From Phyllobates terribilis (taxonomy: Eukaryota), in assembly GCF_046119375.1 (NCBI RefSeq), contig NW_027362769.1, positions 397,854,001 through 397,918,000 on the forward strand: DNA of 64,000 bases. The letters are read 5' to 3'. Both the position numbers and the translations under genes were made by a program. The notes below the pieces were generated by a model, which worked only from the letters and a program-made list of their open reading frames with translations, did not search any database and was not told the origin of the DNA. Shown in pieces: positions 9,236 through 60,934 of this stretch (the first letter of the stretch is position 1; every line of letters begins with the position of its first letter).

Positions 9236-10592
9236 TGTGTGCCGCCCCGGCCGCTGCATTCATGATACTGCTGTATGGCGGTCCGAGTGCTGGTATGGTT
9301 CGACCGGGGGCACGGTCTTTATCAATTGTGGGGGCTAATAATAAAATAATAAAAAAGTTTGTGATGCCAGTTGGGATGTTCGGCCGGGTATGGCTGGGCA
9401 CTGATGAAGGCCCCTGGGAGTTAGGTGGTGATGAGCAGTGCCAGGTGGTTAACCCTTCCCAACCAGGCATGGCTCCCAGGGGAGTTGGAGCAGGTATGGC
9501 ACAGCAGAAAATAATCAGCTTTGGACTGAGTAATAACCAGTTTGTACCTTTTACTGGAGTTCTGCAAACAGTTCCAGAAGTTTCTATACAGTTCACATAC
9601 AGGATTTTGGTCAGACCTGCATGGTGAGGGTTTAGGTTCTCGGCTGTGAGGTGGTGTAGCCATCCTGCTGCTTATTATACCTCTGGTAGATAATTCCTTG
9701 TGTGACATGCAGAAGTAGTGCTGTTGCTTGAAAAGCATCCAGCAACTATTACAAATAACACAAGCACAGGAGACAGGAAGTGTTGTGCTTCAGAAGCATC
9801 CAGCAACTAGAAGGGTTAACACAGTCACAGGAGACAGGGAGTGTTTTAGCAGAGACCTAGGGGGATTGTGGGGAACTTGTTATTGCAATCTGGCTGAAGC
9901 CGAAGAGAAAGGTGGTAGTGTGTTATCTGGATCTGACAGAAGGCAACTGAACAGGATTGAGATCAGATGAGAAACTAAACACAGGTCAGATAAACTCCCT
10001 GAACTAACAGTGCAGAGTATTATTGGGCAGGAAGATAAGGACTGTAAAGAATTGTGTCACAGGGAACATCTGTCCCATCAAACCCCCCTCCCCAATCTCC
10101 ATGCAGGATAAAGAATGCTGTGTACTATTGGGTCCTTGTGAAGAAAAAGCCTGTGGTTGTGTATGCATAGTAGTGTGGTACTAAGAGATCTAATCTATGC
10201 TGAATTATGCTACTGAAGAGACTGTAATACTGTGCTTTGTGAAGAAACTACTGTATTGTTACTGTAGCGGGTTGCTCAAGAAACTCAGACTGTACTGTAA
10301 TGAAAGATTGTTGCTGTAATATCCCTGAATTGCACTGGCCGTGCTTCAGATTAAATTCCACTGTTAAAAAAGACTCGTCAGATGTGTCTGGTCAGCAACT
10401 GACTCTATCGTGTGCCTGAGAAAAGCTGCAGCCTATGTTCGCCCTGAGTAACGGATCCCCCAGGATTCCAAAGAATTCACGAAACCGTCTCGCCCTATCT
10501 GAACCTAGCGGCGTGCGTGTAACACTTGGATCCCCAGGGGTCCAAGGTAAACAGTTACCGGATCTGTGATCCCTTCCAGCGAGCAGGCAACA
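9236..10592. mobile_element. Probable solo LTR, boundaries approximate
   Basis: Begins TGTGTGCCGCCCC and ends ...GGCAACA; flanks TGGA/TGAA resemble a degenerate 4-bp TSD; ATTAAA near 10350; no coding capacity. It truncates the L1 ORF1. Confidence 0.45.
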
Positions 10593-35300: not shown

Positions 35301-45213
<9,913 letters not shown>

Positions 45214-45763
45214 GATCGCTGTCCCGGCCTGTTACACGCTCCTTCTCCTCTGTCTCTCCGCGCCGCAGTGACGGGGGCGGGGTCTGTGCAGCCTCTTATA
45301 TACACTCGGACCGAACCATCTGGCTGTGCCTGCGAGGGGGGGGGAGGCGGGTGCAGGACTGGTATCGTCCTGTGACGATATATAAAGGCTTCAGTCATAG
45401 TTCTGTGTGATAATTCCACGGCACTGAGTGAGGTAATAGTTTATAATGACGGCAGCTTTCACTTTAGGTGATAAATATGTTGAAATTTAACTTTTTTCTC
45501 TTAAATTGTGTAAAACATCGTATTACGGACGCACACAGTCGTGTCCGCTATCGTTGTATAAGTTTCTGCCTCAGTTTCCTCGGCGCAGAGCTGTCTGACA
45601 CCGCCATTTGTGCCGTGAGAGACCGTCGGGGTCGGCGCCATGTTTTGACAGAAAAATTGCGCCACGTGCTTCCGGCAATGGTTATAGAGGGCCCTAGTCT
45701 CATTGCCGGGCGGCTGTGGTGCAGTTGGCGGCCATGTTTGCCCCCTCTACTCCTCTCCTTTTT

Positions 45764-46300
45764 CTCAGGGCGGCGGTTTTCCTTCATTTTCCTGTCAGTG
45801 AGGGACGTCCCGAAGCCCACGATGGCCGCCGGTGGGGCGTGAAGCCGCCATTGTGTGCAGAGACCACAGGAATTGACCGCTTTCATCCAGAACACGGTGA
45901 CCAAACTCCCAATAGGGACAAATATGGCAGCCGGCCGCGAATATGCCGGACGACATGGCGCAGTCGCCTAGCAACAGGCGGGTGAGGTGATGACAAGATG
46001 GCCGACGCCCAGCGTTTCCACAGAGTTTCTCTCAGGGCGGCGGGTTTCCTTCATTTTCCTGTCAGTGAGGGACATCCTGAGCCCACGATGGCCGCCGGTG
46101 GGGCGTGAAGCCGCCATTGTCTGCAGAGACCACAGGAGAAGCCGCCGTCGTCCAGAACACGGTGAGAAATCTACCGACCAAAGTCCCAATAGCAACAAAT
46201 ATGGCAGCTGGGCTCAAAGATACCGGACGACATGGCGCAGTCGCCTAGCAACAGGCGGGTGAGGTGATGACAAGATGGCGGACACCCAGCGTTTCCTCAC
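45764..46300. repeat. 267-bp tandem duplication inside the CpG island
   Basis: 45764-46030 and 46031-46300 align throughout (ctcagggcggcgg ... cctagcaacaggcgggtgaggtgatgacaagatggc). Confidence 0.85.
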
Positions 46301-48215
46301 AGGGTTCACCGGTTTACTCGTACCCCAGCTTTCTCTGACCTCTTGGGTCGTCGCGGCACGGAGGAATTTACGAGCCGCCATTTTTACGACATGGATCCTC
46401 TGAGGGAAAAACGTCCTGCGTCCTGTCAGATAAGTTTGCGCAGTGATGGCGGAGTCTCTGTTTCCTTCACATCTGGTCAGAAAAAGGTCCACACGACTGT
46501 ATTGCGGTACAGGTCCCTGTGTGACCGGGACTAACAGCGTCGTAGGGGGTCGGAGCGGACGGTACGGTCCTGAAAACCTTCCCTGGGTTATTCTCAGCCG
46601 TGAAGTGACGGCACAAGCTCTGTGTGTCACGCAGCTGCCCCCCCCCTGTTCACTGAAGATGGTTTCTCCCATTACTAGCAGAGACCAGTCTGGTCCCAAC
46701 TAAAGGACAAAGAATGGGGGGGGGGGGGAGGGGTGCGATGGCTCAGGCGGTACATGGAGGACAGATGGTCAGAAATGTCAGCACAGGCAGAGCAGTGATG
46801 TTAACGTCTGTGGGGAAAAAGTTTATTTGGTCGCCTCATCTGACTCATTGTCCGCAGATGCGACACATGATAGTGGCCTTCCCTCTAATGCCACTGGGTG
46901 GTGCCAAACTTTTGCACATTACAGGTGTAAAGATCCCCATATAATTGGAGACCGGTTACAGCCACACCTAGTATATAGGCTCCACCCACAGTCACCCTGT
47001 CTATAGGCTCCACCCACAGTCACATCACGTATAGGCTCCACCCACCATCAAGCCATCTATAGGCTGCACCCACAGTCACCCCATCTATAGGTTCTACACA
47101 GTCACACAGCTTTAGGCTCCACCCACAGTCACCCTGTCTATAGGCTCTACCCACAGTCACATCACGTATAGGCTCCACCCACCATCAAGCCATCTATAGG
47201 CTGCACCCACAGTCACCCATCTATAGGTTCTACACAGTCACACAGCTTTAGGCTCCACCCACAGTCATTCCATCTATAGGCTCCACCCACAGTCAACACC
47301 ATATATAGACTCCATCCACAGTCACCCTGTCTATAGGCTCTACCCACAGTCTCCTCACGAATAGGCTCCACCCACCATCAGGCCATCTATAGGCTCTACA
47401 CAGTCACATAGCTTTAGGCTCCACCCACAGTCATTCCATCTATTGGCTCCACCCAGTCAACCCCCTCTATAGGCTCCACCCACAGTCAACCCCCTCTATA
47501 GGCTCCACCCACAGTCAACCCCCTCTATAGGCTCCACCCACAGTCAACCCCCTCTATAGGCTCCACCCACAGTCAACCCCCTCTATAGGCTCCACCCACA
47601 GTCAACCCCCTCTATAGGCTCCACCCACAGTCAACCCCTCTATAGGCTCCACCCACAGCCACTCATCTATAGGCTCCACCCACAGCCTTCCCCATCTATA
47701 GGCTCCACCCACAGTCTTCCCCATCTACAGGCTCCACCCACAGTCTTCCCCATCTACAGGCTCCACCCACAGTCTTCCCCATCTACAGGCTCCACCCACA
47801 GTCTTCCCCATCTACAGGCTCCACCCACAGTCTTCCCCATCTACAGGCTCCACAGTCAACCCCCTCTATAGGCTCCACCCACAGTCAACCCCCTCTATAG
47901 GCTCCACCCACAGTCAACCCCCTCTATAGGCTCCACCCACAGTCACACTCATCTATAGGCTCCACCCACAGCCACTCATCTACAGGCTCCACCCACAGTC
48001 TTCCCCATCTACAGGCTCCACCCACAGTCTTCCCCATCTACAGGCTCCACCCACAGTCTTCCCCATCTACAGGCTCCACCCACAGTCTTCCCCATCTATA
48101 GGCTCCACATACAGTCTACCCCTGTCTATAGGCTCCACATACAGTCACCCCTGTCTATAGGCTCCACATACAGTCACCCCTGTCTATAGGCTCCATCTGC
48201 AGTCACACCCATGTA

Positions 48216-50361
48216 CAGTTGTGCTCAAAAGTTTACATACCCCAGCAGAATTTTTCCTTTCTTGGCCTTGTTTCAGAGAATATGAATGATAACAAAAAAT
48301 TTTTTTTTGTCTCCACTCATGGTTATTGGTTGGGTGAAGCCATTTATTGTCAGTCTACTGTGTTTTCTCTTATTAAATCTTAATGACAACCAAAAACATC
48401 CAAATGACCCTGATCAAAAGTTCACAGACCCCAGTTCTTAATACCGTGTATTGCCCCCTCTAACATCAATGACAGCCTGAAGTCTTTTGTGGTAGTTGTG
48501 GATGAGGTTCTTTATTTTCTCAGATGGTAAAGCTGCCCATTCTTCTTGGCAAAAAGCCTCCAGTTCCTGTAAATTCCTGGGCTGTCTAGCATGAACTGCG
48601 CGCTTGAGATCTTCCCAGAATGGCTCAATGATATTGAGGTCAGGAGACTGAGATGGCCACTCCAGGACCTTCACTTTGTTCTGCTGTAGCTAATGTACTA
48701 GCGTTAATTCATCGCACTCTCTGTAGGGATAGACTCTTAGTAGTGGTGAGTAGCGGCGCGGGCTGCGCCTTGCTTATGGCAGCCCGCGCCGCTACTCCCC
48801 ACTACCAGCTCAGCCCTGCCGTCGGCCAGTCACTGACTTCTACTAAACTACTGAAACCAGCATTACCTGGATCACTAAGAGTCTATCCCTACAGAGATCT
48901 GACTCCTGGTCTTAAGAATAGCCTAAATCCTCAACCCCTACATCAGCCAGCAGCAATAGCGACTGAATTGAATAAGGCCAATTTAGGCCGAAACGTCCCA
49001 ATATATTGTCGCCACCCATCACTGGTCTGATTAATCTAATTTATGCTCTATCAATGAATTACACTTTATCACAACTAAGAGAATGCGATGAATTAATGCT
49101 AGTACATTGTCTTGGGCTCACCAGTCCATTGCATCTGCACCTCGCCTAATGACAGAGTGCACGCCAATTTATCTACTTATCTGTTGTAGCTAATGACAGG
49201 TCGACTTGGCTTTGTGTTTTGGATCGTTGTCATGTTGGAACGTCCAAGTACGTCCCATGCGCAGCTTCCGAGCTGATGAGTGCAAATTTGCCTCCAGTAT
49301 TTGCTGATAACGTGCTGCATTCATCTTTCCTTCAGCTTTTACAAAGTTTCCTGTGCCTTTGTAGCTAACACATCCCCAAAACATCAGCGATTCACCTCCG
49401 TGCTTTACTGTAGGAATGGTGTTCCTTTCATCATAGGCCTTGTTGACCTCTCTCCAAATGTAACTTTTATGGTTGCGGCCAAAAAGTTCAATTTTGGTCT
49501 CATCACTCCAAATTACCTTGTTTCAGAGGTTTTGAGGCTTGTCTCTGTGCTGTTTGGCGTATTGTAGGCGAGATACTTTGTGGCATTTGCGCAGTAATGG
49601 CTTTCTTCTGGCGACTCGACCATGTAGCCCATTTTTCTTCAAGTGCCTCCTTATTGTGCATCTTGAAACAGCCACACCGCTAGTTTTCAGACAGTCCTGA
49701 ATTTCAGCTGATTTTATTTGTGGGTTTTTCTTTGCATCCCGAACAATTTTCCTGGCAGTTGTGGCCGAAATGTTGTTGGTCTACCTGACCGTGGTTTGGT
49801 TTTTACAGAGCCCCTGGTTTTCCATTTGTTAATTACAGTTTGAACGCTGCTGACTGGCATTATCAATTCCTTGGATATCTTTTTGTATCCCTTTCCTGTG
49901 TTATACAGTTCAACTACCTTTTCCCGTAGATCCTTTTTACAATTCTTTTGCTTTCCCCATGAGTCACAATCCAGAAACATCAGTGGCTGGATGAAAGATG
50001 CAAGAGTCTGTCTGGATCCCAGAAACTCACTCAGCTTTTATGCACACCCACTGATTACAAACAAACAGGTTACAGGTGAGGATGTTACCTTTAGTAGCCA
50101 TTCAACCCCATTTGTGTCAAATTCTGTGCATATTATCAGGCCAAAATCACCAGGGTATGTGAACTTTTGATCAGGGTCATTTGTATGTTTTTGGTTGTCA
50201 TTATGAGTTCAAAAAAGAAAACACAGTAGTTTGACAATAAATGGCTTCACCCAACCGATAACCATGAGCAGAGAAAAAGTTTTTTTGTTATCCATATTCT
50301 CTGAAACAAGGCCAAGAAAGGAAAAATTCTGCCGGGGTATGTAAACTTTTGAGCACAACTG
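48216..50361 (-). mobile_element. Full-length inactive Tc1 transposon with an internal insertion
   Basis: TIRs CAGTTGTGCTCAAAAGTTTACATACCCC at both ends; TA on the left (48214-48215), mutated to AA on the right. Transposase pieces 49980-49714, 49384-49190 (FQHDNDPKH) and 48674-48438 (WPSQSPDLNIIE). Confidence 0.95.
48694..49185. mobile_element. About 490-bp structured non-coding insertion, possibly Penelope-related
   Basis: Flanked by a ~15-bp duplication CTG(C/T)TGTAGCTAATG; contains three inverted-repeat pairs and a GGCC-loop-GGCC-GAAACGTC motif. Confidence 0.6.
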
Positions 50362-50939
50362 AATAGGCTCCACCCACAGTCACCCCATCTATAGGCTCCA
50401 CCCACAGTCAATCACATCTATAGGCTCCATCCAGTGTCATACCAGTCTATAGGCTCCACCCACAGTCTCATCCCCACCTATAGGCTCTACCCACAGTCAC
50501 CCGCCATCTCTGCCCCTATAGGGGTCAGTACGTAAATTACTGTCCTGTAGATAATGAAATAATGAGATGGAAATAATGATTTTGACTGAACCATAGATCT
50601 GTATCATCACTGGTAATGAACCATAAGACTGTTTCCCGATGTCCCATCTTCGCCCTCTTTTTCATGTTTTCTTCTTGGTCGACCTCTTGGTTTTTGCATT
50701 CTTTAAAATTTGTTTCTTGATAGGCAGCGTGACTGCCACAGAAATAGGACGGTGTTTTTTTGGGGAGGAGTCACCACAGAATATTATGACTTTTCCTTCT
50801 CTTTATTTTGGACATCGCCCCTTATATAGAGGAATGGACTTTTTTTTTCTGGGGGTATTATGATGTCTGCAGGGGGGTCTGATTGGTTTCTTAGGTGTTA
50901 CCCTACAAAGGGGTCAGATTCATTATCCTTGCCCAGTCA

Positions 50940-51385
50940 TTATGGACTTCCTTACCTCTTTCCGGGCATTTTAGACTTTTTTATCTCATCATTATGGACC
51001 TTCTTATCCCTTCCCTGGTCATTACGGACCTCTTTACCACTTGTCCAATAGTAATGGACTTCCTTACCCATTGCACAGTCGTAATGGACCTTTTCACCCC
51101 TTGCTCAGACGTTATGGGCCTGTTCACCCCTTGCTCAGACGTTATGGGCCTGTTCACCCCTTGCTCAGACGTTATGGGCCTGCTCAGACGTTATGGGCCT
51201 GTTCACCCCTTGCTCAGACGTTATGGGCCTTTTCACCCCTTGCTCAGACGTTATGGGCCTTTTCACCCCTTGCTCAGACGTTATGGGCCTTTTCACCCCT
51301 TGCTCAGACGTTATGGGCCTTTTCACCCCTTGCGCAGACGTTATGGACCTTTTCGCCTTTTGCCCGGACATTATGGACCTTCTCG
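50940..51385. repeat. 30-bp tandem repeat, divergent at the edges and homogeneous in the centre
   Basis: Core unit TTATGGGCCT(G/T)TTCACCCCTTGCTCAGACG. Confidence 0.85.
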
Positions 51386-51493
51386 GCATCAGAAGTGATA
51401 TCCTGCCACACATGAGGACGGTGAGACCTTCCATTGTCCCTCCGCGGACCTGGCATAAAGGGATGACAGGTATATTAAACCCGGGCCTGGAGC

Positions 51494-52931
51494 ATGGTGT
51501 ATGAGATGGTTCTGGAGATCGCAGGAGGTAAGGGTAATAACGCACCAAGTAGGCGGGGGTCTGTGCAGCATCTAGGGGGGCAAATAGGGTGCACCACTGA
51601 GAAGGAAAATGTGGGCTCCACTAGACGGAAAGAACATTTAAAAGTCACTTTGGTTTATGGTAATCCAGGGATGATCACGCCATGGAGAAAGCTACATGAG
51701 GACATCATAATATAATGATGACCTCATAATTCATCTGTAACAAGAGCATGGCGACACACCCAATGACACGCCCCATGATGATGTCATCCCCACATCACAG
51801 TATTCCGCCGTGAGGTCATAATATATTGTGACGTCATCACCCAGTGTATAAAACGTGGTGAGTGAGTCACTGGCGTCACATTGTCCTAGCGCGTTATACA
51901 GACGAAGAAGAGGATCATTCCCGCGTTTCACCGGTTTCTGTCTCTTCTGAGATGGATCATCGTATGACTGACGTCAGACAATACGGTAGCAGCGCTCAGA
52001 CACCGGCCGCCACCAGACGGCGTACGCCTCCCACAGGCCTGTACATGCCGCTAATGAGTCCCTGCGTGGTCGTAGCGGAGCCACAGGGTAAGATGATATA
52101 TTTTTTTACTATGAGGCCCCCTAGTGGTGGAGATGAGTAGACCAATCACTGAGGACTGTGATGTAATATACAGGTAGCAGATGATAGCCCGCCATGCGGT
52201 GCTTATGGAATGCTGTGACATCATAAAGGCAGCAGACGCATCACGGTTCCGTGGTCCGGACCCCATAGTGGTGGCCCCTCAGCTGCCGGATTGTATAAGT
52301 TGGTGTAAAGACTGAACATTACCCAATGTGACGACCTCCATGTTCTCTCTCTCTAGGTGGTGTCTATAATATTGCTTGGATCCCACTTTTTCCTGCTCAG
52401 TGGTGCCCCCTGCCTCCCGCCATCTTTCCCCCATACACCTTGCTCCAGACTCAGGATGTATACAACCCTCACCTTCTCACATCCGGTTCCGGGAGGGTCA
52501 ATGACCAAGCCTCACCGCTCTCAGCCAAAGTCAATAACACCCCCCAGGGCAATATACACAACCCCTCTGCAGGGGTAAGACCCCACAACCCTCCAGACCA
52601 CAGAGCGGACATCATAGTTCTCCCACAGCAAGCTCCATACCCCGGTGCGGTGGGTGATGTTCAAAAAGAGCAGAAGGAAAAGCTAAAATCTCCTGAAGTG
52701 CCACCAGCCCGACCACCAGAGGGTCAGAAAAGCGGCCCGACTACGGGGCTCACGCTGCCGATAAAGAAACAAATCTTACAAAAAGTCCGAAAGAATCACC
52801 AAATCCAAGACAGCGACCGAGAAGACAAAGAATACAGAACCTGCAAGACGGTGAAATTCAACCCTTCAGCAGACCCGAAGACCTTGTCAAGTCTCCTGAA
52901 GGAGCATGAGAAGAAGGCGAAACGTCGTTAG
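51494..52931 (+). CDS. Uncharacterised 268-aa protein (three-exon gene model)
   Basis: Exons 51494-51527, 51890-52087 and 52357-52931. Strong Kozak context AGCATGG with an in-frame stop at 51476; donors GAG|GTAAGG and AGG|GTAAGA; acceptors ...tcctag and ...ctctctctag; both introns phase 1; 807 nt open frame; AATAAA at 52961-52966. Confidence 0.7.
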
Positions 52932-53004
52932 GGTCACTGATCAGATTTATACAGCATCAGAATAAAAATATCTCATCCTGACAGTGCGTATGTAATGTAT
53001 CTAA

Positions 53005-56000
53005 GGGGCTGAGCGGACAGTATCACAAAGGAGAGGATTAGATACACGGCTCAGCAGACAGTATCACACAGGAGAGGATTAGATACACGGCTCAGCAGAC
53101 AGTATCACACAGGATAGGATTAGATACATGGCTCAGCAGACAGTATCACACAGGATAGCATTAGATACACGGCTCAGCAGACAGTATCACACAGGAGAGG
53201 ATTAGATACACGGCTCAGCAGACAGTATCACAGGATAGGATTAGATACACGGCTCAGCAGACAGTATCACACTGGATAGGATTAGATACACTACTCAGCA
53301 GACGGTATCACACAGGAGACGATTAGATACATGGCTCAGCAGACAGTATCACACAGGATAGGATTAGATACACAGCTCAGCAGACTATCACACAGGAGAG
53401 GATTAGATACACAGCTCAGCAGACTATCACACAGGAGAGGATTAGATACACAGCTCAGCAGACAGTATCACACAGGAGAGGATTAGATACACGGCTCAGC
53501 AGACGGTATCACACAGGAGAGGATTAGATACACGGCTCAGCAGACGGTATCACACAGGAGAGGATTAGATACACGGCTCAGCAGACAGTATCACACAGGA
53601 GAGGATTAGATACACGGCTCAGCAGACAGTATCACACAGGAGAGGATTAGATACACGGCTCAGCAGACAGTATCACACAGGAGAGGATTAGATACACGGC
53701 TCAGCAGACAGTATCACAGGAGAGGATTAGATACATGGCTCAGCAGACAGTATCACACAGGATAGGATTAGATACACGGCTCAGCAGACAGTATCACACA
53801 GGAGAGGATTAGATACACGGCTCAGAAGACAGTATCACACAGGAGAGGATTAGATACACGGCTCAGCAGACAGTATCACACAGGAGAGGATTAGATACAC
53901 GGCTCAGCAGACAGTATCACACAGGAGAGGATTAGATACACAGCTCAGCAGACAGTATCACACAGGATAGCATTAGATACACAGCTCAGCAGACAGTATC
54001 ACACAGGATAGCATTAGATACACGGCTCAGCAGACAGTATCACACAGGATAGCATTAGATACACGGCTCAGCAGACAGTATCACACAGGAGAGGATTAGA
54101 TACACGGCTCAGCAGACAGTATCACACAGGATAGGATTAGATACACGGCTCAGCAGACAGTATCACACAGGATAGGATTAGATTCACGGCTCAGCAGACA
54201 GTATCACACAGGATAGGATTAGATACACGGTTCAGCAGACAGTATCACACTGGATAGGATTAGATACACTACTCAGCAGACGGTATCACACAGGAGACGA
54301 TTAGATACATGGCTCAGCAGACAGTATCACACAGGATAGGATTAGATACACAGCTCCGCAGACTATCACACAGGAGAGGATTAGATACACGGCTCAGCAG
54401 ACAGTATCACACAGGATAGGATTAGATACACGGCTCAGCAGACAGTATCACACAGGATAGGATTAGATACACGGCTCAGCAGACAGTATCACACAGGAGA
54501 GGATTAGATACACGGCTCAGCAGACAGTATCACACAGGAGAGGATTAGATACACGGCTCAGCAGACAGTATCACACAGGAGAGGATTAGATACACGGCTC
54601 AGCAGACTGTATCACACAGGAGAGGATTAGATACATGGCTCAGCAGACAGTATCACAGGAGAGGATTAGATACATGGCTCAGCAGACAATATCACACAGG
54701 AGAGGATTAGATACATGGCTCAAAAGACAGTATCACACAGGATAGGATTAGATACATAGCTCAGCAGACAGTATCACACAGGACAGGATTAGATACACGG
54801 CTCAGCAGACAGTATCACACAGGAGAGGATTAGATACACGGCTCAGCAGACAGTATCACACAGGAGAGGATTAGATACATAGCTCAGCAGACAGTATCAC
54901 ACAGGATAGGATTAGATACACGGCTGAGCAGACAGTATCACACAGGATAGGATTAGATACACGGCTCAGCAGACAGTATCACACAGGAGAGGATTAGATA
55001 CACGGCTCAGCAGACAGTATCACACAGGATAGGATTAGATACACGGCTCAGCAGACAGTATCACACAGGATAGGATTAGATACATAGCTCAGCAGACAGT
55101 ATCACACAGGAGAGGATTAGATACACGGCTCAGCAGACAGTATCACACAGGAGAGGATTAGATACACGGCTCAGCAGACTGTATCACACAGGAGAGGATT
55201 AGATACACAGCTCAGCAGACAGTATTACACAGGAGAGGATTAGATACACGGCTCAGCAGACAGTATCACACAGGATAGGATTAGATACACAGCCCAGCAG
55301 ACAGTATCACACAGGAGAGGATTAGATACACGGCTCAGCAGACAGTATCACACAGGAGAGGATTAGATACACGGCTCAGCAAACAGTATCACACAGGATA
55401 GGATTAGATACACGGCTCAGCAGACAGTATCACACAGGATAGGATTAGATACACGGCTCAGCAGACAGTATCACACAGGAGAGGATTAGATACACGGCTC
55501 ATCAGACAGCATCACACAGGAGAGGATTAGATACACGGCTCAGCAGACAGCATCACACAGGAGAGGATTAGATACACGGCTCAGCACACAGTATCACACA
55601 GGATAGGATTAGATACACGGCTCAGCAGACAGTATCACACAGGATAGGATTAGATACACTGCTCAGCAGACAGTATCACACAGGATAGGATTAGATATAC
55701 GGCTCAGCAAACAGTATCACACAGGATAGGATTAGATACACGGCTCAGCAGACGGTATCACACAGGATAGGATTAGATACACGACTCAGCAGACAGTATC
55801 ACACAGGAGAGGATTAGATACATGGCTCAGCAGACGGTATCACACAGGATAGGATTAGATATACGGCTCAGCAAACAGTATCACACAGGACAGGATTAGA
55901 TACATGGCTCAGCAGACAGTATCACACAGGAGAGGATTAGATACACGGCTCAGCAGACAGTATCACACAGGAGAGGATTAGATACACGGCTCAACAGACA

Positions 56001-56626
56001 GTATCACACAGGAGAGGATTAGATACACGGCTCAGCAGACAGTATCACACAGGATAGGATTAGATACACGGCTCAGCAGACAGTATCACACAGGAGAGGA
56101 TTAGATACACGGCTCAACAGACAGTATCACACAGGAGAGGATTAGATACACAGCTCAGCAGACAGTATCACACAGGAGAGGATTAGATACACGGCTCAGC
56201 AGACAGTATCACACAGGAGAGGATTAGATACACGGCTCAGCAGACGGTATCACACAGGAGAGGATTAGATACACAGCTCAGCAGACAGTATCACACAGGA
56301 GAGGATTAGATACACGGCTCAGCAGACGGTATCACACAGGAGAGGATTAGATACACAGCTCAGCAGACAGTATCACACAGGAGAGGATTAGATACACGGC
56401 TCAGCAGACAGTATCACACAGGATAGGGTTAGATACACGGCTCAGCAGACAGTATCACACAGGAGAGGATTAGATACACAGCTCAGCAGACAGTATCACA
56501 CAGGAGAGGATTAGATACACGGCTCAGCAGACAGTATCACACAGGAGAGGATTAGATACACAGCTCAGCAGACAGTATCACACAGGATAGGATTAGATAC
56601 ACGGCTCAGCAGACAGTATCACACAG
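53005..56626. repeat. 41-bp satellite, about 88 copies
   Basis: Unit GCAGACAGTATCACACAGGA(G/T)AGGATTAGATACACGGCTCA. Confidence 0.97.
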
Positions 56627-56663
56627 TATGCAGGCCGTAGTGTCTGGAGGATATAACACATCA

Positions 56664-56678
56664 CCAGTAGAGGGCGCT
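56664..56678 (+). promoter_or_regulatory. CTCF consensus motif
   Basis: CCAGTAGAGGGCGCT; motif only. Confidence 0.5.
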
Positions 56679-57749
56679 CTCCTCCAGAGAGAACAGAAAG
56701 TGAAACTACCTTGTGTTCCTCCTCAGGAGTCCGGAGACGTCGCCCGGTGTTGTGTGCGGGGCAGCCGGGACCTCACTGTTCGCAGTCCCCGAGGAATCGT
56801 CTATTCTGAGGGTCCCGGTAAGAGAATAACGTACAATGTGATCATGTGCTGAACCTATAACTCAGCAATGTGTAGACGTCAGGAACCACAAGTCCCAGCA
56901 CTGATAGGAAAAGGCACCAGGTGCTCATGAGATCTGAGCAGCACTCCCATCATCCGTCCCTGTAGTTACAGAGGTGTGAATCACAAAGCAGGAAAGGAAC
57001 CTGACCTTACAGGAGCCTGAACCCTGAGCAGTGTGAACAGGAGGCTGCAGCCCGGTGTGATTGATGCTGCTGGCAGTATAGGGGACTACCTGTCAATCAC
57101 CTGGAGAGGGGCAAGGAGAAGCCGCCGGGACCCAGTCTGGGCAGCATGACTCTGATGACAGGTTCCTTTGGGCTACGGCCCCACTATCAGTATTTTTTCT
57201 CAGAAGTGGGCGCTCCCTGTATATAGAGATACATGATAAGATACTGTCTGCAGCCACCACTATATGGGTATATGGGGTAACGGTAGCAGAGCCTGTCTGG
57301 TGGCCTTACCCAGGTACATAGCTATTTTAGCTTATTTATGACCAATTGGTTGTATTACTTCCATCTGTATAAGGGTTTTAACCCTTTTGTTTCTGGGTAT
57401 TTTGATTGTGATGGGATATTATTGCTTTGGGGGTACTATTTGTAAAAGGTATTCATGATGGGTGGTATATATTTATTAATACATGTGACCCTGTCGCTCC
57501 CCCCCCCCTTATATTTCCACTTGCTATATAGGCTGACCTTTCGGGCGCTGTGTCACAGTTTTTAACATTGTTTTATTCATGTGGATCCAGCACTCTGTGT
57601 CTACTCTGTCGTCCGCATTTATCTTTGTAATTTGTGTTTACTACATGTGTTAATAAAGGAATTTTCTTACTTCTTTACAATTTTGAACTTGTGTGGCCAT
57701 CTTTTTGTTTCTCTGCTTCACAGAGGAACAATCCCCCCTTATCTTTATT

Positions 57750-60500
57750 ATGATAAGATCCTGTCTGCAGCCACCACTAGGGGAAGCTCCCTGTATACAG
57801 AGATACATCATAAGATCCTGTCTGCAGCCACCACTAGGGGAAGCTCCCTGTATACAGAGATACATGATAAGATTCTGTCTACAGCCACCACTAAGGGGAG
57901 CTCCCTGTATAAAGAGATACATGATAAGATCCTGTCTGCAGCCACCACTAGGGGAAGCTCCCTGTATACAGAGATACATGATAAGATCCTGTCTGCAGCC
58001 ACCACTAGGGGGAGCTCCCTGTATACAGAGATACATGATAAGATTCTGTCTGCAGCCACCACTAGGGGGAGCTCCCTGTGTACAGAGATACATGATAAGA
58101 TCCTGTCTGCAGCTACCACTAGGGGGAGCTCCCTGTATGCAGAGAAACATAAGATTCTGTCTGCAGCCACCACTAGGGGGAGCTCCCTGTATACAGAGAT
58201 ACATGATAAGATTGTGTCTGCAGCCACCACTAGGGGGAGCTCCCTGCATACAGAGATACATGATAAGATCCTGTCTGCAGTCATCACTAGGGGGAGCTCC
58301 CTGTATACAGAGATACATGATAAGATTCTGTCTGCATCCACCACTAGGGGGAGCTCCCTGTATACAGAGATACATGATAAGATCCTATCTACAGCCACCA
58401 CTAGGGGGAGCTCCCTGTATACTGAGATACATGATAAGATCCTGTCTGCAGTCATCACTAGGGGGAGCTCCCTGTATACAGAAATACATGATAAGATTCT
58501 GTCTGCATCCACCACTAGGGGGAGCTCCCTGTATACAGAGATACATGATAAGATCCTGTCTACAGCCACCACTAGGGGGAGCTCCCTGTATACAGAGATA
58601 CAGTACAGACCAAAAGTTTGGACACACCTTCTGATTTAGAGATTTTTCTGTATTTTCCTGACTATGAAAATTGTACATTCACACTGAAGGCATCAAAACT
58701 ATGAATTACCACATGTGGAATTATATACTTAACAAAAAAGTGTGAAACAACTGAAAATATGTCTTATATTCTAGGCTCTTCACAGTAGCCACCTTTTGCT
58801 TTGATGACTGCTTTGCACACTCTTGGCATTCTCTTGATGAGCTTCAAGAGGTAGTCACCGGAAATGGTCTTCCTACAATCTTGAAGGAGTTCCCAGAGAT
58901 GCTTAGCACTTGTTGGCCCTTTTGCCTTCACGCTGCGGTCCAGCTCACCCCAAACCATCTCGATTGGGTTCAGGTCTGGTGACTGTGGAGGCCAGGTCAT
59001 CTGGCGTAGCCCCCCATCACTCTCCTTCTTGGTCACATAGCCCTTACACAGCCTGGAGGTGAGTTTGGGGTCATTGTTCTGTTGAAAAATAAATGAAGGT
59101 CCAACTAAACGCAAACCGGATGGAATAGCATGCCGCTGCAAGATGCTGTGGTTGCCATGCTGGTTCAGTATGCCTTCAATTTTGAATAAAACCCCAACAG
59201 TGTCACCAGCAAAGCCCCCCCACACCATCACACCTCCTCCTCCATGCTTCACTGTGGGAACCAGGCATGTAGAGTCCATCCGTTCACCTTTTCTGCGTCG
59301 CACAAAGACACGGTGGTTGGAACCAAAGATCTCAAATTTGGACTCATCAGACCAAAGCACAGATTTCCACTGGTCTAATGTCCATTCCTTGTGTTCTTTA
59401 GCCCAAACAAGTCTCCTCTGCTTGTTGCCTGTCCTTAGCAGTGGTTTCCTAGCAGCTATTTTACCATGAAGGCCTGCTGCACAAAGTCTCCTCTTAACAG
59501 TTGTTGTAGAGATGTGTCTGCTGCTAGAACTCTGTGTGGCATTGACCTGGTCTCTAATCTGAGCTGCTGTTAACCTGCGATTTCTGAGGCTGGTGACTCA
59601 GATAAACTTATCCTCAGAAGCAGAGGTGACTCTTGGTCTTCCTTTCCTGGGGCGGTCCTCATGTGAGCCAGTTTCTTTGTAGCGCTTGATGATTTTTGCA
59701 ACTGTACTTGGGGACACTTTCAAAGTTTGCCCAATTTTTCGCACTGACTGACCTTCATTTCTTAAAATAATGATGGCCACTCGTTTTTCTTTACTTAGCT
59801 GCTTTTTTCTTGCCATAATACGAATTCTAACGGTCTATTCAGTAGGACTATCAGCTGTGTATCCACCTGACTTCTGCACAACACAACTGATGGTCCCAAC
59901 CCCATTTATAAGGCAAGAAATCCCACTTATTAAACCTGACAGGGCACACCTGTGAAGTGAAGACCATTTCCGGTGACTACCTCTTGAAGCTCATCAAGAG
60001 AATGCCAAGAGTGTGCAAAGCCGTCATCAAAGCAAAAGGTGGCTACTGTGAAGAAACTAGAATATAAGACATATTTTCAGTTGTTTCACACTTTTTTGTT
60101 AAGTATATAATTCCACATGTGATAATTCATAGTTTTGATGCCTTCAGTGTGAATGTACAATTTTCATAGTCATGAAAATACAGAAAAATCTTTAAATGAG
60201 AAGGTGTGTCCAAACTTTTGGTCTGTACTGTACATGATAAGATTCTGTCTGCAGTCACCACTAGGGGGAGCTCCCTGTATACAGAGATACATGATAAGAT
60301 TCTGTCTGCAGCCACCACTAGGGGGAGCTCCCTGTATACAGAGATACATGATAAGATCCTGTCTGCAGCCACCACTAGGGGGAGCTCCCTGTATACAGAG
60401 ATACATGATAAGATTCTGTCTGCAGCCACCACTAGGGGGAGCTCCCTGTATACAGAGATACATGATAAAATTCTCTCCGCATCCACCACTAGGTGGAGCT
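57750..60500. repeat. 57-bp minisatellite, about 20 copies, split by a Tc1 (57750-58600 and 60231-60500)
   Basis: Unit ATGATAAGATCCTGTCTGCAGCCACCACTAGGGGGAGCTCCCTGTATACAGAGATAC. Confidence 0.95.
58601..60230 (-). mobile_element. Full-length Tc1 transposon (1630 bp) with inactivated transposase
   Basis: TIRs start CAGTACAGACCAAAAGTTTGGACACACC and run about 270 bp, overlapping the ORF end; TA TSD at 58599-58600 and 60231-60232. Transposase 59816-58764 has an in-frame TGA at 59600-59598 and QQNND in place of the catalytic QQDND. Confidence 0.96.
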
Positions 60501-60934
60501 TCCTGCTCGTCAGTACTGCGGGACCTTACACAATCTGACATTGTTTAGACCAGGGGTCCTCAAACTACGGCCCGCGGGCCACATGTTGCCCGCGGAGGAC
60601 TTTCATCCGGCCCGCCGGGCTATGGGCGGAGGGGAGCTGTACCATTGCCCGCCCTACCCCTCGCTTGATCAGGGCCCCGGCAGGCGGATACTTACCTCTC
60701 CCCGTGCCTCCTCAGATCCGCTGTCTTCCGTGCTCTGCGCTTCCTGTGACGTCTCAGGTCAGAGGGCGCGGTGACGTCTTTACACCGCGCCCTCCCGAGT
60801 GCCGTCACAGTCAGCGCAGAGCGGGACGCCGCCGCCGCGACGCTGGAGTCCAGACCAGAGTAGAGCAGCGGCAGCAAGTGAGAAGTGAGGTGAGTATTGG
60901 ATTTTTTTTTTTTTTTAATGTATGGAGGCATAGG

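What the first reader, a model, noticed from the sequence alone, without database searches (positions are those of the whole stretch)
51494..52966. Orphan three-exon gene (268 aa) head-to-head with FUS, with a PP1-docking-like motif
Seen: the ORF track shows only fragments here, but three exons splice into one open frame (MVYEMVLEIAG/ARYTDEEEDH...AEPQ/GGVYNIAWIPLFPAQW...RTCKTVKFNPSADPKTLSSLLKEHEKKAKRR*). The model has a strong Kozak start, an upstream in-frame stop, near-consensus GTAAG donors, matching phase-1 introns (362 and 269 nt) and AATAAA 30 nt after the stop. Established: [RK]-x-[VI]-{P}-[FW] is the RVxF PP1-docking consensus, and KTVKF fits it. Inference: a lineage-restricted, mostly disordered Pro-rich protein with a basic NLS-like tail, possibly a PP1 regulator transcribed from the FUS CpG island. 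I recognise no domain or orthologue.
Basis: partly seen in the sequence, partly recalled or inferred. Interest (0 to 1): 0.75.

Follow-up and report, generated by a model that had tools for sequence, protein, structure and literature searches.

The report
Poison-frog orphan ORF beside FUS
The open reading frame is real and its last exon is transcribed, but the 5' end was mis-modelled, the PP1 motif is not conserved, and it is a fast-evolving poison-frog-only gene candidate already annotated as "uncharacterized" in a related frog.

Summary
The three-exon ORF is in the sequence exactly as described. Only exon 2 (from ATG 51952), intron 2 and exon 3 are shared with the one relative found, Ranitomeya variabilis LOC143784255 (247 aa), in a collinear FUS-flanking locus.

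- **Exon 1 and intron 1 are not conserved.** In R. variabilis the ATG is GTG, the donor is deleted and the acceptor AG is CG.
- **RNA evidence.** Contigs from four runs confirm the exon 3 acceptor at 52357. Where the upstream letters are shown, exon 3 is joined to a different exon ending at 45060 in the FUS CpG promoter. In R. variabilis that exon starts a GVIN1/URGCP-like GTPase gene, so the ORF is nested in that gene's first intron. This isoform has no AUG for the long frame.
- **PP1 motif.** KTVKF is KTEKC in the relative, and 11% of shuffled exon 3 sequences show such a motif by chance.
- **No other relative.** An exhaustive search of 1.84 billion proteins found none. AlphaFold predicts disorder.
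- **Coding status is mixed.** The frame stays open across about 19% divergence (roughly p 0.005). However, dN/dS is 0.84 in exon 3 and 0.30 in exon 2.

Verdict: a probable (about 55%) young two-exon coding gene with its own CpG/TATA promoter; otherwise a non-coding alternative terminal exon. Modest interest.

The parts
44931..45060 (+). Upstream exon that RNA contigs join to exon 3. It is the first exon of the FUS-divergent transcription unit and lies antisense within FUS intron 1. The 5' limit is uncertain; only 45029-45060 was verified letter by letter.
   Evidence: The X5 contig carries 130 loose letters before 52355. The last 30 match 45029-45058 uniquely, followed by AG|gtaatg. L001:1831, the CDS start of the R. 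variabilis GVIN1/URGCP-like model, maps to window 44972.
45203..45213 (-). Coding start of FUS exon 1 (ATGGCGACCAACG|gtaag).
   Evidence: Read from the sequence. L001:2082, the CDS start of the 559-aa minus-strand gene, maps here. A downstream minus-strand exon matches PDB FUS RRM chains at E 4e-20.
50667..51620 (-). Degenerate inverted copy of exon 3 (52377-52828), interrupted by the 30-bp minisatellite.
   Evidence: Three collinear inverted matches at 62-89% identity. Also seen against R. variabilis.
51494..51527 (+).
   Evidence: No RNA depth. In R. variabilis the ATG is GTG and a 58-nt deletion removes the donor.
51829..51853 (+). Putative internal promoter core (inferred): a perfect CRE, TGACGTCA, at 51829-51836 and TATAAAA at 51847-51853, inside a roughly 300-bp CpG islet (51800-52100).
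   Evidence: Two of the three perfect CREs in the 64-kb window lie at 51829 and 51969. CpG o/e is 1.1-1.3 here against 0.3-0.5 in the flanks, with the same peak in R. variabilis. In R. variabilis the motifs are weaker: TGATGTCA and CATAAAA.
51890..51951 (+).
   Evidence: The acceptor AG is CG in R. variabilis. dN/dS is 1.43. The RefSeq orthologue starts downstream of this stretch.
51952..52087 (+). First coding exon: conserved ATG (GAGATGG), 45 codons plus 1 nt.
   Evidence: 82% amino-acid identity to P0001 residues 1-44. dN/dS is 0.30, Fisher p 0.017.
52088..52356 (+). Intron 2, with conserved GTAAGA donor and TAG acceptor. Holds one 55-bp unit with a CTCF-like core (52116-52127, minus strand); the unit is repeated about 5 times in R. 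variabilis.
52357..52931 (+).
   Evidence: RNA contigs start at 52355 in four runs. 59% amino-acid identity to P0001 residues 47-247. dN/dS is 0.84.
52932..52984 (+). 3' UTR with AATAAA at 52962-52967.
   Evidence: The X1 contig ends at 52984. 91% identity to R. variabilis.

Best explanation
I read this as a young, taxonomically restricted protein-coding gene of poison frogs with two coding exons, not three.

- **Coding region.** It runs from ATG 51952 to 52087 and from 52357 to 52931, about 236 aa.
- **Position.** It sits on the plus strand inside the first intron of a GVIN1/URGCP-like GTPase gene. That gene, not this ORF, is the one that shares the FUS CpG promoter head-to-head.
- **Promoter (inferred).** It is transcribed from its own small CpG/TATA/CRE promoter at about 51.83-51.89 kb.
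- **Product.** A Pro-rich, largely disordered, basic protein with a conserved HEKKAKRR tail, so probably nuclear. Amino-acid sequence evolves almost neutrally while the frame is kept open.
- **Terminal exon (shown).** Its last exon and poly(A) signal also serve as an alternative terminal exon for transcripts that start at the FUS-divergent first exon (45060 spliced to 52357). That isoform cannot encode the long frame.

Shown: the exon 3 acceptor, the 45060-52357 splice, orthology and synteny, and frame conservation. Inferred: the internal promoter, translation, and nuclear location. A PP1-regulator role is not supported.
For: - **Orthologue.** XP_077128394 (LOC143784255, R. variabilis) covers exon 2 from the conserved ATG and all of exon 3, with the same junction.
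- **Synteny.** The two loci are collinear from window 44820 to 60505, including FUS exon 1 and the same satellites.
- **Frame kept open.** It is open in both species across 107 substitutions in exon 3. The neutral simulation gives P(no stop) of 0.05-0.07. Both CDS indels are in frame (3 and 30 nt), against 3 of 10 in the introns. Combined, roughly p 0.005.
- **Constraint in exon 2.** dN/dS is 0.30, p 0.017.
- **Own promoter.** A CpG o/e peak of about 1.0-1.3 sits over TATAAAA and exon 2 in both species, as high as the FUS island.
- **Expression.** Exon 3 is covered at depth 15-36 with zero mismatches in contigs from two studies.
- **Annotation practice (my own knowledge, not tested).** NCBI does not normally release purely ab initio models, so the R. 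variabilis exon 2-exon 3 junction probably has RNA support.
Against: - **No exon 2-exon 3 junction seen.** Three runs have depth 0 on exon 2. In X5, depth-2 pieces run unspliced 40 nt past the exon 2 donor.
- **Different upstream partner.** The one upstream sequence shown for exon 3 is the exon ending at 45060.
- **Little residue-level constraint.** Exon 3 dN/dS of 0.84 is not different from 1 (p 0.45). Differences by codon position are 37/45/44, with no third-position excess.
- **No extra conservation.** Exon 3 is 81% identical between species, no better than the introns at 86-88%.
- **No protein-like signal.** AlphaFold mean pLDDT is 46 and the ESM recognition score is low.
- **Thin comparison.** Only two species could be compared.
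- **Weak promoter motifs in the relative.** The CRE and TATA motifs are degraded in R. variabilis.
Confidence: 0.55

Rival explanations
1. Exon 3 is a non-coding alternative terminal exon. On this reading it is only a poly(A)-terminated last exon of short transcripts from the FUS-divergent promoter, the first exon of the GVIN1/URGCP-like gene. The product is a promoter-associated lncRNA or a premature-termination isoform. The long frame is incidental, and the RefSeq protein in R. variabilis is simply the longest ORF that the pipeline picked.
For: - All four contigs start at 52355. That fits an upstream exon ending in AG (45059-45060) and does not fit exon 2, which ends in GG. For X5 the join to 45029-45060 is shown directly.
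- That isoform has AUG-initiated ORFs of no more than about 41 aa.
- Exon 3 dN/dS is about 0.84, with no codon-position bias.
- Exon 3 is no better conserved than its flanks.
- No homologue, domain or fold was found.
Against: - An open frame with in-frame indels in both species is unlikely under neutrality, about 0.5%.
- The exon 2 ATG and its Kozak context are conserved, and exon 2 has dN/dS 0.30.
- A separate CpG islet sits over exon 2 in both species.
- NCBI models the ORF as a separate gene from its host.
Confidence: 0.35
2. The ORF is a relic of a repeat or transposon. On this reading the frame is a leftover of a foldback or inverted-repeat element or a local inverted duplication, with no present function. 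Exon 3 would be one arm and 50667-51620 the other.
For: - Exon 3 (52377-52828) has a degenerate inverted copy 0.8-1.7 kb upstream.
- The locus is embedded in minisatellites.
- R. variabilis carries a 2.9-kb insertion, and the window a 2.1-kb insertion, close by.
Against: - There is no transposon-type Pfam domain.
- No other copy exists in the 64-kb window or in the 21-kb relative locus.
- The position is orthologous and single-copy in two species.
- It is spliced and polyadenylated as an exon.
Confidence: 0.07
3. The protein is a PP1 regulatory subunit that docks through KTVKF.
For: KTVKF fits [RK]-x(0,1)-[VI]-{P}-[FW].
Against: - The motif is KTEKC in the orthologue, and no RVxF-type match exists anywhere in P0001.
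- 11% of shuffled exon 3 sequences carry such a motif.
- There is no SILK-type partner motif, and no similarity to any known PP1 regulator in Pfam or in the exhaustive search.
Confidence: 0.03

Closest known systems
LOC143784255, uncharacterized protein XP_077128394.1 of Ranitomeya variabilis (RefSeq)
   Same: It lies in an orthologous position between FUS exon 1 and the same 41-bp and 57-bp satellites. It has the same start codon, the same exon 2/exon 3 junction and the same C-terminal HEKKAKRR and stop. Amino-acid identity is 82% in exon 2 and 59% in exon 3.
   Different: It is 247 aa against about 236 aa, because of a 10-codon and a 1-codon indel. It lacks the KTVKF motif. Its intron 2 carries about 5 copies of a 55-bp unit, against one here.
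Taxonomically restricted (orphan or de novo) genes arising within lncRNA or intronic transcription units
   Same: The features match the general picture of young genes (my own knowledge). There are no homologues outside a narrow clade. The product is short and disordered, dN/dS is near 1 and the frame is kept open. The ORF is nested in a host intron, and its exon is shared with a non-coding isoform.
   Different: De novo origin is not shown. No outgroup syntenic sequence could be examined, and translation is untested.
RVxF-type PP1-interacting proteins (for example PPP1R2, NIPP1, PNUTS)
   Same: One match to the degenerate RVxF consensus, inside a disordered region.
   Different: The motif is not conserved in the only orthologue. 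There are no accessory PP1 motifs and no sequence similarity to any PP1 regulator family.
Promoter-associated divergent or antisense transcripts of CpG-island genes
   Same: The observed isoform starts in the FUS CpG island on the opposite strand. It overlaps FUS intron 1 antisense, is spliced and polyadenylated, and has only short AUG ORFs.
   Different: In R. variabilis that first exon is annotated as the coding first exon of a 1653-aa GVIN1/URGCP-like GTPase. It is therefore a bidirectional gene pair rather than a free-standing lncRNA.

Membership tests
PP1 regulatory subunits with an RVxF docking motif | An RVxF motif [RK]-x(0,1)-[VI]-{P}-[FW] that is conserved among orthologues | tested here: not met
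   KTVKF is present in the window but is KTEKC in P0001, and no match exists anywhere in P0001. The chance rate in shuffles of exon 3 is 11%.
PP1 regulatory subunits with an RVxF docking motif | Sequence similarity to a described PP1-regulator family, or accessory motifs such as SILK | tested here: not met
   No Pfam family at E up to 1. The exhaustive HMMER search found only P0001 and a spurious satellite translation. By eye, the nearest thing to a [GS]IL[RK] motif is QILQ.
PP1 regulatory subunits with an RVxF docking motif | Physical binding to the PP1 catalytic subunit | not testable with these tools
   Needs a pull-down or co-immunoprecipitation.
Orthologue group of R. variabilis LOC143784255 | Significant full-length protein similarity | tested here: met
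   E 2e-58 in the database search. BLASTP gives 5e-65 for exon 3 and 2e-23 for exon 2.
Orthologue group of R. variabilis LOC143784255 | Conserved synteny and exon structure | tested here: met
   Collinear from 44820 to 60505. The ATG, intron 2 donor and acceptor, and the stop all map base for base.
Functional protein-coding gene | Frame kept open between species beyond the neutral expectation | tested here: met
   P(no stop) is 0.05-0.07, and 2 of 2 CDS indels are in frame.
Functional protein-coding gene | Purifying selection on residues (dN/dS clearly below 1) | tested here: inconclusive
   Exon 2 gives 0.30 (p 0.017), exon 3 gives 0.84 (p 0.45) and the pooled value is 0.71. Only one species pair was available.
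Functional protein-coding gene | An mRNA that joins the start codon to the rest of the frame | tested here: not met
   No 52087-52357 junction appears in the four runs laid, and the only junction shown is 45060-52357. This is limited to contigs of four runs from unknown tissues, so absence is weak.
Functional protein-coding gene | Evidence of translation (ribosome profiling or peptides) | not testable with these tools
   No such data within reach.
Alternative terminal exon or short isoform of the FUS-divergent GVIN1/URGCP-like gene | A spliced molecule joining that gene's first exon to this exon | tested here: met
   The loose end of the X5 contig matches window 45029-45058 and is followed by exon 3 from 52355. 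L001:1831, the CDS start of the URGCP/GVIN1 model, maps to window 44972.

The most novel reading that the evidence does not exclude
The most novel reading not excluded is a gene born within poison frogs. It would have arisen de novo or through a local inverted duplication inside intron 1 of a GVIN1/URGCP-like GTPase gene. Its frame would have been kept open since the two frogs diverged while its residues drift almost neutrally. Its terminal exon would also serve as a premature terminator for the host gene next to the FUS bidirectional promoter.
Probability: 0.3. Interest if true: 0.5.

Novelty: new member of a known kind. Interest (0 to 1): 0.3.

Why it matters
If it is translated, it would be a datable example of a clade-restricted vertebrate gene. 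It has an identifiable host locus, an ancestral inverted duplicate and a non-coding sister isoform, which makes it useful for studying how new genes arise in very large, repeat-rich amphibian genomes. It has no bearing on PP1 biology as far as the evidence goes. For annotation, this frog's genome should carry a two-coding-exon model orthologous to LOC143784255, and exon 3 should also be recorded as an alternative terminal exon of the FUS-divergent gene.

Tried and rejected
- **Pfam scan** of exon 2 and exon 3 peptides: no family at E up to 1.
- **Word-indexed protein search** with exon 3: one hit only, P0001.
- **Exhaustive HMMER profile search** (P0001 plus the two window exons as separate rows): P0001 and P0002 only. 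P0002 is a 1593-aa translation of a tandem repeat with 15 weak stretches, rejected as spurious.
- **ESM Atlas:** no usable hit, and recognition 991, which is low.
- **AlphaFold2:** mean pLDDT 46 with only two short helices. No fold search was run because the model is too poor.
- **Scan notes by sequence:** nothing.
- **Literature search** on the R. variabilis genome: nothing bearing on this locus.
- **CRE/TATA promoter idea:** perfect CREs are enriched here but degraded in R. variabilis, so it is kept only as an inference.
- **"Exon 3 evolves faster than neutral" (positive selection):** rejected as unproven. Neutral identity in nearby unique DNA ranges from 66% to 88%.
- **Joined spliced model left out.** Under the operators' rule I did not search, fold or look up the joined protein (268 or 236 aa). 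Searches were made exon by exon by reference, with P0001 as the full-length proxy.

Full report
**1. The observation**

- ATG at 51494 has A at -3 and G at +4, with an in-frame TAA 18 nt upstream.
- The donors are G|GTAAG at 51527/8 and 52087/8. The acceptors are TAG| at 51889 and 52356.
- Both introns (362 and 269 nt) are phase 1.
- The exons are 34+198+575 nt, giving 268 codons and a stop at 52929-52931.
- AATAAA lies at 52962-52967.

The locus sits between minisatellites: a 30-bp array at 51051-51381 and a 41-bp array from 53007. By my estimate a stop-free run of 190 codons could occur by chance about once per 64-kb window at this G+C content. The single-genome ORF alone therefore proves little.

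**2. A relative exists**

The exon 3 peptide finds one protein, P0001. It is XP_077128394.1, 'uncharacterized protein LOC143784255' of Ranitomeya variabilis, 247 aa.
- Exon 3 aligns end to end at 59% identity (E 5e-65).
- Exon 2 aligns from its internal Met at 82% identity (E 2e-23).
- The exon 2/exon 3 junction is the same.

The R. variabilis locus (L001) is collinear with window 44820-60505. It includes the same 29-, 30-, 41- and 57-bp satellites and a minus-strand 559-aa gene. That gene's start maps to window 45213, where the sequence reads ATGGCGACCAACG|gtaag.

The minus-strand gene is FUS. One of its exons matches PDB FUS RRM chains at E 4e-20. The two loci are therefore orthologous and the ORF is single-copy in both.

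**3. What is and is not conserved**

| Feature | In R. variabilis |
|---|---|
| ATG 51952 with GAGATGG context | conserved |
| Intron 2 donor (GGGTAAGA) | conserved |
| Intron 2 acceptor (TAG\|GTGGTG) | conserved |
| Stop codon and HEKKAKRR tail | conserved |
| Intron 1 donor | removed by a 58-nt deletion |
| Intron 1 acceptor AG | CG |
| 20 codons upstream of ATG 51952 | dN/dS 1.43 |

The conserved unit is thus a two-coding-exon ORF of about 236 aa starting at 51952. The KTVKF motif reads KTEKC in the orthologue. P0001 has no RVxF-type match anywhere, and 11% of shuffles of exon 3 contain one.

**4. RNA evidence**

Eight runs from two studies of one organism hold 35-45% of the words of 51440-52990. 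I laid four of them.
- **Exon 3.** In all four, a contig covers 52355 to 52953-53073 at depth 15-36 with 0-2 mismatches.
- **These are spliced RNA molecules.** The X5 contig carries 130 further letters upstream of 52355. The last 30 match window 45029-45058 uniquely. They are followed by AG and a gtaatg donor at 45061.
- **Same partner in the other runs (inferred).** Every contig starts at 52355 rather than 52356 or 52357. That fits an upstream exon ending in AG, and does not fit exon 2, which ends in GG.
- **Exon 2.** It has depth 0 in three runs. In X5 two depth-2 pieces (51852-51995 and 51980-52127) run unspliced 40 nt past its donor.
- **Poly(A) site.** The X1 contig ends at 52984, about 17 nt after AATAAA, which fits the predicted poly(A) site.

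The exon 3 acceptor and the terminal-exon status are therefore shown. No exon 1-2 or exon 2-3 junction was seen.

**5. What the upstream exon is**

It lies in the FUS CpG island and is antisense to FUS intron 1. In R. variabilis the CDS of a 1653-aa GVIN1/URGCP-like GTPase model starts at L001:1831, which maps to window 44972. That model runs past the end of the locus, so LOC143784255 is nested in its first intron.

The gene that is head-to-head with FUS is therefore this GTPase gene. In the window the corresponding frame is closed before the exon ends, because of a 4-nt difference (TGA at 45047). The observed isoform therefore cannot encode the long ORF, and its AUG-initiated ORFs are at most about 41 aa.

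The donor is GC instead of GT in R. variabilis.

**6. Coding or not**

For coding:
- In a neutral simulation with the observed substitution spectrum, only 5-7% of runs kept exon 3 free of stops after 107 substitutions.
- The two CDS indels are 3 and 30 nt, while only 3 of 10 intron indels are multiples of three. Jointly this is roughly p 0.005.
- Exon 2 has dN/dS 0.30 (p 0.017).
- A CpG o/e peak of 1.1-1.3 in the window and 0.9-1.05 in R. variabilis sits over TATAAAA (51847) and exon 2. It is as high as the FUS island and is flanked by values of 0.3-0.5.
- Two of the window's three perfect CREs lie at 51829 and 51969. This suggests an internal promoter, though the motifs are degraded in R. variabilis.

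Against coding:
- Exon 3 dN/dS is 0.84 (p 0.45).
- Differences by codon position are 37/45/44.
- Exon 3 is 81% identical between species, against 86-88% for the introns and 91% for the 3' UTR. Nearby unique DNA ranges from 66% to 87%.
- No domain, homologue or fold was found.

My weighting is about 55% a real, fast-evolving coding gene and about 35% a non-coding terminal exon. The remainder goes to a repeat relic (7%) and the PP1 reading (3%).

**7. Origin**

Exon 3 (52377-52828) has a degenerate inverted copy at 50667-51620, 62-89% identical and split by the 30-bp minisatellite. The copy is also visible against R. variabilis, so it predates the split of the two frogs.

This points to a local inverted duplication around a roughly 750-bp centre that holds exon 2 and the CpG islet. 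I found no transposon signature.

**8. Comparison with known things, and verdict**

It is an orthologue of an already annotated but uncharacterized RefSeq gene. It behaves like a taxonomically restricted young gene. It fails the testable criteria for a PP1 regulator.

Limits of this work:
- Only one species pair could be compared.
- The RNA evidence comes from contigs of four runs of unknown tissue.
- The joined spliced protein was deliberately not searched or folded. Searches were exon by exon, by reference.

Noticed in passing
window 53007-56626 and 57750-58602, 60231-60505; L001 11357-16993 and 17427-21262: The 41-bp and 57-bp satellites hold the same positions in both frogs and are 92-95% identical between species. 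Unique DNA around them is only 66-88% identical. The 41-bp array also shows very high contig depth (1e5 to 8e5) in the RNA-like runs.
   Followed up: partly
window 52116-52127 (minus strand); L001 about 10214-10490: A CTCF-like core (CCACTAGGGGGC) lies in intron 2 inside a 55-bp unit. The unit is single here and repeated about 5 times in R. variabilis. The 57-bp satellite unit carries a near-identical core (CCACTAGGGGGAG). Earlier notes on this genome report CTCF-like arrays near divergent promoters.
   Followed up: partly
window 48219-50362: About 2.1 kb splits the 29-bp satellite (46974-48212 and 50363-50499) and has no counterpart in the R. variabilis locus. It is therefore an insertion specific to this lineage. 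It contains the hairpin-rich stretch noted earlier at 48694-49185.
   Followed up: no
   Followed up: no
window 44972-45060 versus L001 1831-1923: The ATG that starts the R. variabilis GVIN1/URGCP-like CDS is conserved here. A 4-nt difference puts it out of frame, with TGA at 45047. Either this frog's GTPase gene starts elsewhere or one of the assemblies or models is wrong. The R. variabilis donor at this exon is GC, not GT.
   Followed up: partly
window 44820-44940: A block in the shared FUS promoter is about 90% conserved. It holds ETS-like (ACTTCCGG), E-box (CACGTG), CCAAT and GC-box motifs, and two AAATGGCG (YY1-like) motifs.
   Followed up: no
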